A DNA stretch of 64,000 nucleotides from Parasitella parasitica NRRL 2501 (GCA_025201805.1 MU619279.1:121160-185159); one strand, 5' to 3'; shown: positions 10,211 through 19,596, counted from the first letter of the stretch. Made by a program: numbers and translations. Notes: generated from the sequence alone by a model not told the origin.

Positions 10211-13010
<2,800 letters not shown>

Positions 13011-13117: not shown

Positions 13118-14419
13118 TTACTGGTCAGAGCGATTTATTGAACTAGTAGCACGAACATCACTCTCTTTGGGACAACATAATAGACTAGAAATTGTCGTGG
13201 ATGAAGATTGCGAACTAATGGATTGTCTAGATTGTAGTACAAGACTGCCTTCATCTTCATTGTCATTGTATTCTTGAGAAGAAGCGGGAGATAGAGGCTT
13301 GTAAACCGAAAACCCAATATTGAAGGAATGCGATGTTGCTACTGATTTAGTAGCTGATGACGGTGATGTTGATGATGATGATGGTGCTGAGCTGGTGGTG
13401 TTACTATGGAAACTATCTTTAAAAAAAGACGAGGACAGAGAAGAGAAGCCTTCGTCATTATATTGGCTGCTATCATTACTCGCAGTACGTTCCTGCTTGC
13501 GACGCTTGTACCATTGATGCTTGCGCTCTTGTGCTTTCAATTTACTAATTTCTCTTGTGAGCTTAATTTTCGTTTCCTCGTATCTTATGAGTTCCGCTTC
13601 CATGGCAAGTTGGGTCAATGTGTCACGACAAGTACTATTCTGAGCTAGCTGGTTTTCTGTTGCTTGTCGACATTGAATCGCATGATCTACCTGTTGTTGT
13701 AGGACTTCGATTCTTTCTAAGCGCTGCTCGGATGAACGTTGTGCGCTTTCTTGACGTCTTATCATGATGGCTCGCTTATGCTGATGAGTATCGTCTTGCG
13801 GACGGCTTTGCTGCTGTGAAACGGATATATATTTGGGAGGCGTAGTGCTTTTTTCTCGCAATTTAGATCTGCTTGAGCCCCTCTTATAGCGGTAACCCTC
13901 TTCAAGAAGTTTCTTCTTGGCTAGATCAAATAAATCACCTTTTTTTGATATCAGTAAAGGGTTCTCTAGAGCCAGCTGGGTAGATGCACGGTTGATTGCT
14001 TCTTCATAAGATGTTAATGGCCTATTACTGGTATTTTTCCCATAGATAGTGGCATTGAGAATGATGAATTCTCGAGTGGAAGGAGCAGGAGTCTATGATT
14101 ACAAATTAGCATAAATCGGTTGGTAAGATACAGCAGCTTTAATTACGGTATCATTGGCAGGTGGTGTGGGCTGCCCTTGTGGTTGTAATAGCGATTGTTG
14201 TGACGAATTGAGCTGTCTCACAGCCTTTTTGAATTTGATAGAATGGAAAGGCAGCATATTCAAAGCTTTTAGAAATTCTGATAATTCTTGATCAGTAAAT
14301 TGCAATATTTGATCTAAATCTTCATCAGTTGCGCCAGCTTCTATGAAAGCTTGGTGGTATTTTTCAAGCTGTAGCGTGAGTAAAAAACTTTTCAAGGTTT
14401 GGCTTTTATCTATAGACAT
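13118..14419 (-). CDS. NAB (NGFI-A binding protein)-like protein: NCD1/SAM-like N-terminus, NCD2-like domain, coiled coil and Ser-rich tail (2 exons; intron 14093-14146)
   Basis: Exon 1 encodes LQLEKYHQAFIEAGATDEDLDQILQFTDQELSEFLKALNMLPFHSIKFKKAVRQL. Exon 2 encodes ATIYGKNTSNRPLTSYEEAINRASTQLALENPLLISKKGDLFDLAKKKLLEEGYRYKRGSSRSK and continues in frame into ORF 13118-13861. Confidence 0.75.
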
Positions 14420-16659: not shown

Positions 16660-18159
16660 ATGTTTCATTCTTCTAGTTCACGACATGAACAATATCTTTT
16701 CCGTTCAAACACATCAAAAGCGACATTACATAAAAAACGATCTTCTCTGGAATCAGAAAATTCAGGGGCAGATAGTGGATACACTTCATCTTCCTCCACG
16801 CCATCTGCCTTGACGTCTCCTTCCACCGCTGCGACGTCGACTGCAAACGTTTCTGAGATTGCTAGCATCACCAACAAACATGTGACCCCGCCAAATCATG
16901 ATTTGATTGCAACAGCACCAACAGCTACAGTGAAGAAAAAGAAATCGAAAAGGCATCAACCTCCTCGACAGCCCGATCTTGTTTATTCTTGTCCGAGGCC
17001 TTTAGCCTTTCCGTTTCACAACGATGACCATTTTTTACCCATTGCGGAAGCCGATCCGCGCGATGTAGCAAGAGTTTCTCCATCACTGAATAGATCCTCG
17101 TCGCTTCAGTCAAGCAAAACATCAATTGGGTCTACTCCAATGTATGAAAACTACAGCTACGCTGGCAGCAATAGCCAGAAAGGTTTAGACAGCGAGTCGT
17201 CTTATAGCCGGCAATCTTCTATCTTCAGCACAATTCAGCGTGGTACCGTGCGCTCCATCCGATCTCTGTTCCAGCTATCGGAGTCGCACTCTACTGGAGA
17301 CTTGAACCGTGTTCAGACCAACAACACTACAAAAACAAACTATAGCGGGTCTGCCTCAACTTCAAACCCTCCGTTGCAGAAATTGGTGATTAAGAAAGGA
17401 ACAGTCCAGTCCATCAAGGATATGTTTACCTTGAAGCGAAACAACATTCAGGCCCAACGTGTACCACAACAACAACAGCAACCATCACTAAAGCAACAAA
17501 ACGGAAGAATAAGTGCCGCTATTGGCCAGTTTGAGTCATCGTCGTCTACCATCAACTATTCCAGAGCATCCATCGCTGCCTCTGCATCCAGAAAGGGCAG
17601 TTCAAAATCTCTTGCAGCTACCAAAATCAGTATTACGCCTCCAACTCCCTCTCCTTCTCCCTCTCCCTCCCGATCCAAGTCTCTGAAATCCAGGGCTGCT
17701 GAATTTGCTAGCCGAACAATATGGAAACCCAAGGCTCAGGAACCCTCGTTGGCGGCAAACGCGACTCCTGCAACCAAACCGCTACCCAAGAACCCAGCTG
17801 GCAAAAAGACGCTGAAATCAGAAGTCAAAAAGATCTCAGCGCGAGTAATGGCTTTACCGAAAAAGTGGGCCAGTGCGACGCCGTCAGCAGCAGCAACAGC
17901 TGCACCATCATCATCACCATCACAGCCAGTACCAGGGCCTAATGCCAACGACACATCCAAGTCTAAAAGATCTCTTTTTGCTTCATTAAGACGATCCGAT
18001 GTATCTGCGAGTGTGGAAAACGGGAAAAAGGGTGTTTGTACAGCCACTCGAGATGAAACAACGCCCCCTTCTGCCCCTACTACCAAGGTTGGTAAGATGT
18101 GGAAGAGCTTCAAGGGCTTCGTCACTGGTAAAAAACCTTCCAAAATTGGTATCTTGTAA
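16660..18159 (+). CDS. Uncharacterised 499 aa Ser/Pro/Lys-rich, likely disordered protein (single exon)
   Basis: Uninterrupted 1.5 kb ORF with coding-like composition and no recognisable globular domain. Confidence 0.75.
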   Translation: MFHSSSSRHEQYLFRSNTSKATLHKKRSSLESENSGADSGYTSSSSTPSALTSPSTAATSTANVSEIASITNKHVTPPNHDLIATAPTATVKKKKSKRHQPPRQPDLVYSCPRPLAFPFHNDDHFLPIAEADPRDVARVSPSLNRSSSLQSSKTSIGSTPMYENYSYAGSNSQKGLDSESSYSRQSSIFSTIQRGTVRSIRSLFQLSESHSTGDLNRVQTNNTTKTNYSGSASTSNPPLQKLVIKKGTVQSIKDMFTLKRNNIQAQRVPQQQQQPSLKQQNGRISAAIGQFESSSSTINYSRASIAASASRKGSSKSLAATKISITPPTPSPSPSPSRSKSLKSRAAEFASRTIWKPKAQEPSLAANATPATKPLPKNPAGKKTLKSEVKKISARVMALPKKWASATPSAAATAAPSSSPSQPVPGPNANDTSKSKRSLFASLRRSDVSASVENGKKGVCTATRDETTPPSAPTTKVGKMWKSFKGFVTGKKPSKIGIL

Positions 18160-18332: not shown

Positions 18333-18603
18333 AGAACTATATACCAGCCCTTCTTTTAGTTTCCCTTCTCTTTCATTTCGTTAATTTTATTGGCCTACAT
18401 GTTGTACAACAAATTAATAAACAACTTGTATAAATACCTTAGTAATTGCTTACTGTGCATTTTGCATTGTGAATTTCAAACAGCAAAAACATGACAAATA
18501 TACTTTCTCCATTTATCCCGTTTGTTTTATAACGCATGTATAAATAAGTATTCATACGCTTTTTGTCTTTCTTATCTCTCCAGCAATCTTTATCTTTGTG
18601 CAA

Positions 18604-19596
18604 ATGTCTAGTTCTCCTCAATGTGCTTACATCGGCTTGGGCGCTATGGGCAAATCCATGGCCGGCCATATCGCCAAGAAGCTTGAAAGTCTAAACTACC
18701 CTCCTCTTTTGGCTTACAACCGTACTCAAGCACGCGCCGAAGATTTAAAGAAAACCCATAGAGTAGTGGTCGCCGAATCCTTGGAACAAGTAGCGCAATC
18801 TGCAGACATAATCTTTTCCTGTCTCTTGAATGACGCTGCTGTCGTCGATACTGTCAACTCTCTCAAACCTTACTTAAAACCTAACGCAATCCTTGTAGAG
18901 TCCTCTACCATCAGCCCCGCTCTTGCTCAAAAACTTGCTGCTGAACTAAAGCAGAAAAACGTCTCTTACATTGCTTGTCCCGTAGTTGGTCCTCCAGTAC
19001 AAGCTGCTTCAGGTAGCTTGACTGTTTTAATTGCTGGTCCGGAAGATGCGCGCCAGCAAGTATTGCCCTTGTTGGACCAGGTTATTGGGAAAAAGGTGAT
19101 TAATTTGGGCCAGGACGTTGGTGAATCATTGCGTTTAAAGCTGTGTGCCAACTTCTTTGTTACCAGCGTAGTAGAAGTGGTCGCTGAAGGCATGACTTTG
19201 GGCGAGGCAGCTGGTGTGGGCCAGGAAAATGTCAAAGAGTTGCTTGATTCCCTCTTTCCCAACACTCTTTTCGGCATCTATGCTGGCCGTATGCTGAATA
19301 ATACCTACCGCGATGAGATCGCTTTCCCTATTTCCGGAGCAAAGAAGGACGTTGGTCATATCACTGAAATGGCAAAGGAGAATGGCGTCTCGCTTCCTGT
19401 TACTGAAATTTTTCTGCAAAATGCCAATAAGGTACAAGAGGAGCAAGGCAATATTGACTTGTCTGGCATTGTTGGAAGTAAGTTCACACTTTGCCATAAA
19501 AATATAGATTAAATCGTGCTAATATTAGTCTAAATACTAGATTTGAGAGTGAAGGCCGGTCTCGGTTTTGATCTTGAAAACAAAAAAGAGAAATAA
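18604..19596 (+). CDS. NAD(P)-dependent beta-hydroxyacid dehydrogenase (3-hydroxyisobutyrate/6-phosphogluconate dehydrogenase NAD-binding family)
   Basis: Contains YIGLGAMGKSMA, AYNRT, ESSTISP, ACPVVGPP, catalytic LKLCAN and KDVGH. One 3' intron (~19478-19540); the final exon ends NKKEK*. Confidence 0.9.

What the first reader, a model, noticed from the sequence alone, without database searches (positions are those of the whole stretch)
13118..14419. Fungal homolog of the animal NAB (NGFI-A-binding) corepressor with both NCD1 and NCD2
Seen in the sequence: after removing intron 14093-14146, the protein has a SAM-like N-terminal block (L..Y..AFI..G..D..Q......E.......M.P.H.....KA.R). It also has a second block (AtIYG....R.LT.yE..INrA..QL.l.np.Ll.kk.dLF.LAkk...eGYrY...sRSK). 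Established: these patterns match the NAB conserved domains NCD1 and NCD2 as I recall them. NAB1/2 are known as metazoan corepressors of EGR zinc-finger factors and are not described in yeasts. Inference: this early-diverging fungus may retain a pre-metazoan NAB repression module. A possible partner is the set of EGR-related C2H2 factors such as CreA/Mig1. The ORF track misses the NCD2 segment entirely.
Basis: partly seen in the sequence, partly recalled or inferred. Interest (0 to 1): 0.8.

Follow-up and report, generated by a model that had tools for sequence, protein, structure and literature searches.

The report
Fungal NAB-family transcription cofactor gene
This two-exon gene of the mould Parasitella parasitica encodes a true relative of the animal NAB (EGR-binding) corepressors. 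The family is present across the Mucoromycota fungi, databases already tag it automatically, and I found no study of it.

Summary
A minus-strand gene (exon 1 14419-14147, GT..AG intron 14146-14093, exon 2 14092-13118) encodes 415 aa. It is identical to NCBI model BD408DRAFT_416396 of Parasitella parasitica.

- **NCD2:** exon 2 hits Pfam NCD2 above the curated cut-off (31.3 vs 25 bits), but only model positions 59-125.
- **NCD1:** exon 1 is a SAM domain whose best Pfam model is SAM_NCD1, below cut-off (20.1 vs 24.3). Sixteen of 22 orthologs hit it.
- **Homology to animal NABs:** a Mucorales profile finds human NAB1 NCD2 (2YUF) as best PDB sequence (E 3.7e-7) and best fold match (Z 6.2). It finds coral and sea-star NABs at E 1e-16 to 1e-18 among 1.8 billion proteins. 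Profile-profile comparison gives 99.6% probability (E 7e-25) over 270 collinear columns: SAM, NCD2 core, an xSRSK motif, a helical region and a basic motif.
- **Distribution:** Mucorales, Umbelopsis, Endogone, Glomeromycota and Mortierellomycota.
- **Support for the model:** intron position, synteny with a cullin gene and a synonymous-substitution excess.

It is not new to databases. UniRef names orthologs 'NAB co-repressor domain-containing protein', and a 2014 survey lists PF04905 in Rhizopus. I found no paper describing it. Corepressor function, the partner and the origin (ancestral versus ancient transfer) remain inferred. No RNA evidence could be obtained.

The parts
14147..14419 (-). Exon 1, codons 1-91 (start ATG at 14419-14417)
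   Evidence: Translation. Identical to the first 91 residues of NCBI model P0001.
14195..14407 (-). SAM domain of NCD1 type, residues 5-75
   Evidence: Pfam SAM_NCD1 20.1 bits (cut-off 24.3), best of the SAM models. 16 of 22 orthologs hit SAM_NCD1, best E 9.2e-7. The AF2 model matches the EphA5 SAM domain with Z 10.1, rmsd 1.6 A over 68 residues. It aligns to NCD1 of animal NABs in hhalign. There are 27 synonymous vs 5 amino-acid-changing codon differences to the other Parasitella assembly.
14093..14146 (-). Intron, 54 nt, GT..AG, phase 0 after codon 91
   Evidence: Sequence. Introns sit at the same codon in P. parasitica GCA_000938895.1 (58 nt) and Mucor circinelloides (65 nt), with lower identity and indels.
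13118..14092 (-). Exon 2, codons 92-415 plus stop (13118-13120)
   Evidence: Translation. Identical to residues 92-415 of P0001.
13856..14077 (-). NCD2 core, residues 97-170, ending in the invariant YKRG-x-SRSK motif
   Evidence: Pfam NCD2 31.3 bits, above the cut-off of 25, model positions 59-125. The family profile against PDB finds 2YUF (NAB1 NCD2) at E 3.7e-7. The AF2 model (pLDDT 84) has 2YUF as best of 48,161 chains: Z 6.2, 77 residues, 29% identity, rmsd 7.3 A; the next hit is Z 4.3. Codon differences are 21 synonymous vs 3 amino-acid-changing.
13493..13765 (-). Helical, coiled-coil-like region, residues 201-291. It ends in the basic motif at 13496-13543 (residues 275-290), a likely nuclear localisation signal.
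   Evidence: The QERKH-x-WY core is invariant in the 22 aligned Mucorales proteins. The motif is also found in Endogone, Acaulospora and Mortierella proteins. It aligns to the helical region and R-S-[DE]-R-Y motif of coral and sea-star NABs. Codon differences are 24 synonymous vs 7 amino-acid-changing. The coiled-coil and NLS roles are inferred from composition.
13142..13174 (-). C-terminal motif C-P-K-E-S-D-V-R-A-T-S (residues 398-408), conserved in most Mucorales only
   Evidence: Alignment. A motif scan finds it in Mucorales proteins but not in the Endogone, Glomeromycota, Mortierella or animal proteins. Function unknown.

Best explanation
The gene encodes the Mucoromycota ortholog of the NAB (NGFI-A/EGR-binding) family of transcription cofactors.

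Shown:
- A 415-aa protein with the NAB layout in the same order as in invertebrate NABs: an N-terminal NCD1-type SAM domain, a short disordered linker, the C-terminal core of NCD2 ending in YKRG-x-SRSK, a helical region of about 90 residues, and a basic K/R motif.
- It is single copy in this genome, under purifying selection in these three blocks, syntenic with a cullin gene in Mucorales, and present in all major Mucoromycota lineages sampled.

Inferred, by analogy with NAB1/2, Drosophila Nab and C. elegans MAB-10:
- The SAM domain binds a short peptide in a sequence-specific (probably C2H2) transcription factor and self-associates.
- The NCD2 core and helical region carry the regulatory (mostly repressive) activity.
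- The KRRK motif brings the protein into the nucleus.

The protein lacks the N-terminal half of Pfam NCD2, the long animal linker, and the vertebrate Nab1 C-terminal / CHD4-interacting region. Any repression would therefore have to work through the NCD2 core, not the NuRD-recruiting tail.
For: - Gene model.
- Pfam NCD2 above cut-off. 20 of 22 orthologs hit NCD2 and 16 of 22 hit SAM_NCD1.
- PDB sequence search with the family profile: only NAB1 NCD2 (2YUF) is significant, E 3.7e-7.
- Exhaustive profile search of 1.84 billion representatives: 236 hits at E<=1e-10. After Mucoromycota, the next full-length hits are annotated NABs with both domains matched (Montipora NAB1-like 2.3e-18, Acanthaster NAB2-like 1.1e-16).
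- hhalign of the fungal against the animal alignment: 99.6%, E 7e-25, 270 collinear columns.
- Folds: SAM Z 10.1; NCD2 core best match 2YUF, Z 6.2.
- ESM Atlas nearest clusters are all NAB (score 0.81-0.84, a lead only).
- Distribution across Mucorales, Umbelopsis, Endogone, Acaulospora and Mortierella/Podila.
- Single copy in the genome.
- Known roles of NCD1, NCD2 and the CID: PMC8230482. NAB-EGR/LIN-29 function: PMC10584935.
Against: - For this protein alone SAM_NCD1 is below Pfam's cut-off and nearly tied with generic SAM_1. A whole-genome six-frame scan with PF04904 found nothing.
- Only half of the Pfam NCD2 model is matched.
- Foldseek did not find 2YUF. The VIA match has a high rmsd (7.3 A) and Z 6.2, a level the tool's notes call possibly a common arrangement for helical domains. 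It stands out only because it ranks first and nothing else reaches Z 5.
- There is no expression, localisation, interaction or phenotype data.
- No EGR-type R1 peptide was sought.
- The vertebrate repression tail (Pfam Nab1 PF04902 / CHD4-interacting region) is absent.
Confidence: 0.85

Rival explanations
1. It is the same homolog, but not inherited vertically from the common ancestor of animals and fungi. Instead the ancestor of Mucoromycota acquired it by ancient horizontal transfer, possibly on a mobile element, from an early animal or another eukaryote.
For: - Patchy range: every named fungal hit is Mucoromycota. No Dikarya, chytrid or unicellular holozoan name appeared.
- A third set of NCD2-core proteins exists in coral- or sponge-like assemblies. 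One copy lies about 4 kb from a protein-primed DNA polymerase B ORF.
- These score higher with the fungal NCD2 profile (64-77 bits) than canonical animal NABs do (35-56 bits).
Against: - In the NCD2-core tree the Mucoromycota sequences form one group (SH-aLRT 92), apart from the animal NAB group (branch length 0.8, SH-aLRT 90). They are not nested in any animal lineage.
- The family is in every Mucoromycota lineage sampled.
- The fungal proteins share the NCD1-type SAM and the whole collinear layout with canonical NABs. The one third-set gene examined has a generic SAM_1/SAM_2 exon and a PHD exon.
- Most hits are unnamed, so absence elsewhere is not shown.
Confidence: 0.2
2. It is a true NAB homolog, but in fungi it is not a transcriptional corepressor. 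It could, for example, be a SAM-polymer or coiled-coil scaffold, or a condensate protein with another nuclear or cytoplasmic role.
For: - The vertebrate CHD4-interacting tail and the Nab1 domain are missing.
- The N-terminal half of NCD2 is missing.
- A Mucorales-specific C-terminal motif of unknown role is conserved.
- Nothing functional was tested here.
Against: - The blocks conserved between fungi and animals are the ones that carry partner binding and repression in NABs.
- A basic KRRK motif fits nuclear import (inference).
- NAB function with zinc-finger factors is conserved from nematodes to mammals.
Confidence: 0.25
3. It is a generic SAM-domain protein whose second block resembles NCD2 only by chance or composition.
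For: The single-sequence SAM_NCD1 score is below the cut-off, and the single-sequence PDB hit is weak (E 0.0078).
Against: - NCD2 scores above Pfam's curated cut-off.
- The family profile gives E 3.7e-7 to 2YUF, with the next PDB hit at 0.005.
- E 1e-16 to 1e-18 to annotated NABs in 1.84 billion proteins.
- hhalign E 7e-25 over 270 columns.
- The block is not low-complexity, and it shows a 7:1 synonymous excess.
Confidence: 0.02

Closest known systems
Invertebrate NAB proteins (e.g. Montipora 'NGFI-A-binding protein 1-like' P0183, Acanthaster 'NAB2-like' P0089)
   Same: Collinear over about 270 columns: NCD1-type SAM, NCD2 core with the I-Y-G ... L-T ... N-x-A ... L-F ... G-Y/F ... G-x-S-R-S-K landmarks, a helical region, then a basic motif ending in an aromatic residue.
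   Different: The fungal linker between SAM and NCD2 is about 20 residues, against 70-250 in animals. The region matching Pfam NCD2 positions 1-58 is absent. The basic motif reads QERKHQWYKRRK, against Q-[RK]-R-S-[DE]-R-Y in animals. The fungal tails are unrelated, and most Mucorales tails end in a C-P-[KR]-E-S-D-V-R motif.
Vertebrate NAB1 / NAB2
   Same: Same family. NCD1 binds EGR factors and NCD2 represses (PMC8230482). NAB1 NCD2 (PDB 2YUF) is the best sequence and fold match in the PDB.
   Different: There is no Nab1 C-terminal domain (PF04902) and no CHD4-interacting region. The fungal protein is shorter (415 aa). EGR partners with an R1 peptide are not known in fungi.
C. elegans MAB-10 and Drosophila Nab
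   Same: These are NAB cofactors that work with zinc-finger factors other than classical EGR1-3 (LIN-29; Rotund/Squeeze from my own knowledge). This shows the module is not tied to vertebrate EGRs. Nematode NABs are hit by the fungal profile with both domains.
   Different: They are more divergent from the fungal proteins in NCD2 (32-39 bits) than cnidarian or echinoderm NABs (about 53 bits).
Unnamed NCD2-core proteins of coral- or sponge-like assemblies (P0094, P0163, P0179, P0124)
   Same: They share the NCD2 core and the xSRSK motif followed by a charged helical region. They score 64-77 bits with the fungal NCD2 profile.
   Different: No NCD1-type SAM was detected. The one gene examined has a generic SAM exon and a PHD exon, and another copy lies beside a protein-primed PolB ORF. 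They form separate groups in the tree.

Membership tests
NAB (NGFI-A/EGR-binding) cofactor family | N-terminal NCD1, a SAM-type domain (Pfam PF04904) | tested here: met
   Met at family level. 16 of 22 orthologs hit SAM_NCD1 (best E 9.2e-7), against 6-7 for generic SAM models. The region aligns to animal NCD1 in hhalign, and the SAM fold scores Z 10.1. For this one protein the score is 20.1 bits, below the 24.3 cut-off, and the genome scan with PF04904 was blank.
NAB (NGFI-A/EGR-binding) cofactor family | NCD2 (Pfam PF04905) downstream of NCD1 | tested here: met
   31.3 bits against a cut-off of 25, but only model positions 59-125. 20 of 22 orthologs hit it. 2YUF is the best PDB sequence match (E 3.7e-7) and the best fold match (Z 6.2).
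NAB (NGFI-A/EGR-binding) cofactor family | Searching back from the fungal family finds NABs, with both domains in the same order | tested here: met
   The best non-fungal full-length hits among 1.84 billion proteins are annotated NABs with two matched stretches. hhalign gives E 7e-25 over 270 collinear columns.
NAB (NGFI-A/EGR-binding) cofactor family | Binding of NCD1 to the R1 peptide of an EGR-type zinc-finger factor, and self-association | not testable with these tools
   Needs yeast two-hybrid, a pull-down or complex modelling. No candidate partner was sought.
NAB (NGFI-A/EGR-binding) cofactor family | Transcriptional repression by NCD2 | not testable with these tools
   Needs a DNA-tethering reporter assay or a knock-out with RNA-seq.
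Vertebrate NAB1/NAB2 subfamily | C-terminal Nab1 domain (PF04902) / CHD4-interacting domain | tested here: not met
   No PF04902 hit in this protein or in any of the 22 orthologs. A hemichordate NAB does carry it. This feature defines the vertebrate/deuterostome subfamily, not the NAB family as a whole.

The most novel reading that the evidence does not exclude
NAB is an ancestral opisthokont cofactor that predates animals, survives in fungi only in Mucoromycota, and there partners a fungal C2H2 factor. On this reading the NAB / zinc-finger regulatory pair is older than multicellular animals and can be dissected in a genetically tractable mould such as Mucor lusitanicus.
Probability: 0.35. Interest if true: 0.6.

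Novelty: new member of a known kind. Interest (0 to 1): 0.45.

Why it matters
NAB proteins are treated in the literature as animal cofactors of EGR-type factors. They act in differentiation, myelination, puberty timing and the NAB2-STAT6 fusion oncogene.

A collinear, selected ortholog in every major Mucoromycota lineage means one of two things. Either the module predates animals and was lost in Dikarya, or it crossed kingdoms very early.

It offers a simple system in which to ask what the conserved NCD2 core actually does. Its biochemical mechanism is still unclear in animals. The fungal protein has this core without the NuRD-recruiting tail.

It also shows that the evolutionarily conserved unit is larger than the two Pfam domains: NCD2 core, xSRSK motif, helical region and basic motif.

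The practical value is modest. Databases already tag the domain, so the finding is an unremarked annotation rather than a discovery of a new kind of system.

Tried and rejected
- **Foldseek against PDB:** the two-domain model returned only SAM domains. The NCD2-core model returned nothing significant. Only the exhaustive VIA search recovered 2YUF.
- **PF04904 scan of the whole genome:** blank, and its controls were also blank, so it is uninformative.
- **Word-indexed search with a mixed fungal and animal alignment:** it returned only Mucorales, Umbelopsis, echinoderm, hemichordate and nematode names, so it did not extend the range.
- **Search with the orphan fungal-like metagenome protein P0091:** it found only itself.
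- **Cluster look-ups of 20 unnamed hits:** they named only nematodes and one coral. The taxa of the third NCD2 set therefore stay uncertain.
- **Pfam scan of ORFs around the third-set copies:** it gave only SAM and PHD hits, so I cannot say whether those copies sit in Maverick/Polinton-like elements.
- **Literature searches for a fungal NAB:** they found only a passing Pfam listing. One search was badly framed and uninformative.
- **Rejected:** chance similarity, and a bZIP reading of the helical-plus-basic region (the basic motif lies C-terminal to the helix, not N-terminal).
- **How the spliced model was searched:** exon by exon by reference, or as the identical database protein P0001. The exons were joined only inside scripts, to check identity with P0001 and to count codon changes. 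No typed joined sequence was sent to a search tool.

Full report
**What is there**

On the minus strand, window 14419-14147 translates to 91 residues and 14092-13118 to 324 residues plus a stop. The two are in frame with each other. The 54 bases between them begin GT and end AG on that strand.

A word-indexed protein search with exon 2 returned NCBI protein P0001, 'hypothetical protein BD408DRAFT_416396 [Parasitella parasitica]', 415 aa, at 100% identity. Its sequence is exon 1 followed by exon 2 (checked in a script).

The mechanical ORF list has exon 1 running into the intron (14099-14419) and an ORF that starts only after the NCD2 block (13118-13861).

All searches were done exon by exon by reference, or with the identical stored protein P0001. 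The exons were joined only inside scripts.

**Is the splice real?**

Comparative evidence stands in for it.

- In a second assembly labelled P. parasitica (L005) and in Mucor circinelloides (L006), the orthologous genes have one intron at exactly the same codon boundary. The introns are 58 and 65 nt, GT..AG, with indels and lower identity than the exons.
- Without splicing, the NCD2 block could not be translated.
- That block shows 21 synonymous against 3 amino-acid-changing codon differences to L005, and 32 against 6 to Mucor.
- The SAM block shows 27 against 5, and 25 against 13.
- The helical-plus-basic block shows 24 against 7, and 42 against 11.
- The two linkers show the reverse pattern (2 against 10, and 5 against 16, to L005).
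- In all three genomes the gene lies tail to tail with a cullin gene (window + strand, ending at 13010).

**Domain tests**

- Against Pfam, exon 2 hits NCD2 (PF04905) at E 2.4e-07, 31.3 bits, above the curated cut-off of 25. The match covers model positions 59-125 of 125.
- Exon 1 hits SAM_NCD1 (PF04904) best, at 20.1 bits. That is below the 24.3 cut-off and nearly tied with SAM_1 at 19.1.
- Across 22 Mucorales orthologs, 20 hit NCD2 and 16 hit SAM_NCD1 (best E 9.2e-7). Only 6-7 hit the generic SAM models.
- A six-frame genome scan finds a single NCD2 locus in the 32.8-Mb assembly. The same scan with PF04904 was blank, as were its controls.

**Homology to animal NABs**

- Exon 2 alone finds human NAB1 NCD2 (PDB 2YUF) as its best solved relative, at E 0.0078.
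- A profile of the first ~170 residues of 18 Mucorales proteins (A2) raises this to E 3.7e-7, with the next PDB entry at 0.005.
- The same profile, scored against 1.84 billion representative proteins, gives 821 hits at E<=0.001 and 236 at E<=1e-10.
- After the fungal proteins, the next full-length hits with both domains matched are annotated NABs: Montipora 'NGFI-A-binding protein 1-like' at 2.3e-18 and Acanthaster 'NAB2-like' at 1.1e-16. Nematode 'NAB co-repressor domain-containing' proteins follow.
- Profile-profile comparison of the full-length fungal alignment (A1) with 20 animal NABs (A4) gives 99.6% probability, E 7e-25, over 270 collinear columns.

That alignment, and the direct multiple alignment, show that the shared unit is larger than the two Pfam domains. 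It comprises the SAM domain, the NCD2 core with its I-Y-G, L-T, N-x-A, L-F and G-Y landmarks, an almost invariant G-x-S-R-S-K motif, a helical charged region of about 90 residues, and a basic motif. In fungi the basic motif reads QERKHQWYKRRK. In corals and sea stars it reads Q-[RK]-R-S-[DE]-R-Y.

The ESM Atlas feature search also lists only NAB clusters as nearest (scores 0.81-0.84, a lead only).

**Folds**

- An AlphaFold2 model of residues 1-172 (pLDDT 75) has a five-helix SAM domain. It matches the EphA5 SAM domain with Z 10.1, rmsd 1.6 A over 68 residues.
- A model of the NCD2 core built on 45 diverse sequences (pLDDT 84) is a small helical domain.
- Foldseek found nothing for it.
- An exhaustive alignment against 48,161 PDB representatives put 2YUF first: Z 6.2, 77 residues, 29% identity. 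It was the only chain with Z of 5 or more. The rmsd is poor (7.3 A) against this NMR model.
- I take this as supportive, not decisive. The sequence evidence carries the claim.

**Range**

Named fungal members come from:

- many Mucorales genera and Umbelopsis;
- Endogone;
- the glomeromycete Acaulospora;
- Mortierella and Podila.

All of these have the ERKH-x-WY basic motif about 100 residues after xSRSK.

One orphan protein (P0091) also has the NCD2 core, the helical region and an ERKFQ variant of the basic motif. It lies on a metagenome contig next to a Fungal_trans gene, and it has no named relatives.

In a maximum-likelihood tree of the 81-column NCD2 core, which is weakly resolved, three groupings appear:

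- the Mucoromycota sequences form one group (SH-aLRT 92);
- the canonical animal NABs form another, on a branch of length 0.8 (SH-aLRT 90);
- a third, unnamed set lies between them.

That third set includes a Montipora coral protein, and the Atlas associates it with Porifera. The one gene I examined has a generic SAM exon, the NCD2-core exon and a PHD exon. Another copy lies about 4 kb from a protein-primed DNA polymerase B ORF.

I saw no named Dikarya, chytrid or unicellular holozoan member. Most hits are unnamed and only the top 150 were listed, so absence is not shown.

**How it most likely works**

In animals, NCD1 binds the R1 peptide of EGR factors, NCD2 represses, and a C-terminal region recruits CHD4/NuRD (PMC8230482). 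MAB-10 works with LIN-29 in nematodes (PMC10584935).

The fungal protein keeps the first two modules plus the helical and basic region. It lacks the Nab1/CHD4-binding tail.

My best reading is a nuclear adaptor. Its SAM domain would dock on a sequence-specific, probably C2H2, factor and self-associate. Its NCD2 core and helical region would deliver a regulatory, probably repressive, activity. The KRRK motif would serve as a nuclear import signal. These functional steps are inferred.

The fingers of Mig1 resemble EGR fingers (from my own knowledge), but NABs bind outside the fingers.

**Novelty**

- UniRef already names many Mucorales orthologs 'NAB co-repressor domain-containing protein', and their precomputed Pfam hits include PF04905.
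- A 2014 survey of fungal domain content lists NCD2 (PF04905) among domains found mainly in Fusarium oxysporum and Rhizopus delemar, without comment (PMC4102429).
- Full-text searches found no paper that discusses a fungal NAB.

So this is a genuine but automatically annotated and unstudied fungal branch of a known family: a new member of a known kind. Three things add to the bare annotation: the extended collinear architecture, the presence in all Mucoromycota lineages, and the existence of a third NCD2-core set in early animals.

**Verdict**

- Vertical versus horizontal origin, and function, remain open.
- Interest is moderate.

Noticed in passing
window 10211-13010 (+) and 13118-14419 (-); L005, L006: The NAB-like gene lies tail to tail with a cullin gene, with the stops 108 bp apart in the window. 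The same arrangement is kept in the other P. parasitica assembly and in Mucor circinelloides, where the neighbour carries Pfam Cullin and Cullin_Nedd8.
   Followed up: partly
window 13118-14419 vs L005:3001-4345: The two assemblies labelled Parasitella parasitica are quite divergent at this locus: 84% protein identity, and about a third of the codons in conserved blocks carry synonymous changes. This suggests distinct lineages or species under one name.
   Followed up: partly
L002:5001-6026, L003:10001-10882, L004:324-1364: A third set of NCD2-core proteins, neither Mucoromycota nor canonical NAB, occurs in unnamed assemblies. One member is from the coral Montipora, and the nearest Atlas cluster is mostly Porifera. 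In L002 the gene is about 4 kb from a 1388-aa protein-primed PolB ORF (PF03175). In L003 it is preceded by a generic SAM ORF and followed by a PHD ORF. In L004 it overlaps a 930-aa ORF with no Pfam hit.
   Followed up: partly
P0097 (479 aa, ENA contig): One unnamed protein carries two tandem NCD2-core copies.
   Followed up: no
P0091 (metagenome 3300059473, 18-kb contig): A fungal-like contig (its neighbour has Pfam Fungal_trans) encodes an NCD2 core, a helical region and an ERKFQ basic motif, with no SAM in the called ORF. A search found no named relatives. It may come from an unsampled fungal lineage.
   Followed up: partly
window 13142-13174 (-): The C-terminal motif C-P-[KR]-E-S-D-V-R-A is conserved in most Mucorales orthologs. 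It is absent from Endogone, Glomeromycota, Mortierella and animal proteins. Its function is unknown.
   Followed up: partly
window 16660-18159 (+) and 18598-19512 (+): A 499-aa Ser/Thr/Pro-rich low-complexity ORF lies beyond the 5' (promoter) end of the NAB-like gene. Further on is a 304-aa ORF with a G-x-G-x-M-G dinucleotide-binding start that looks like a 6-phosphogluconate / 3-hydroxyisobutyrate dehydrogenase-type enzyme. This is by eye only.
   Followed up: no
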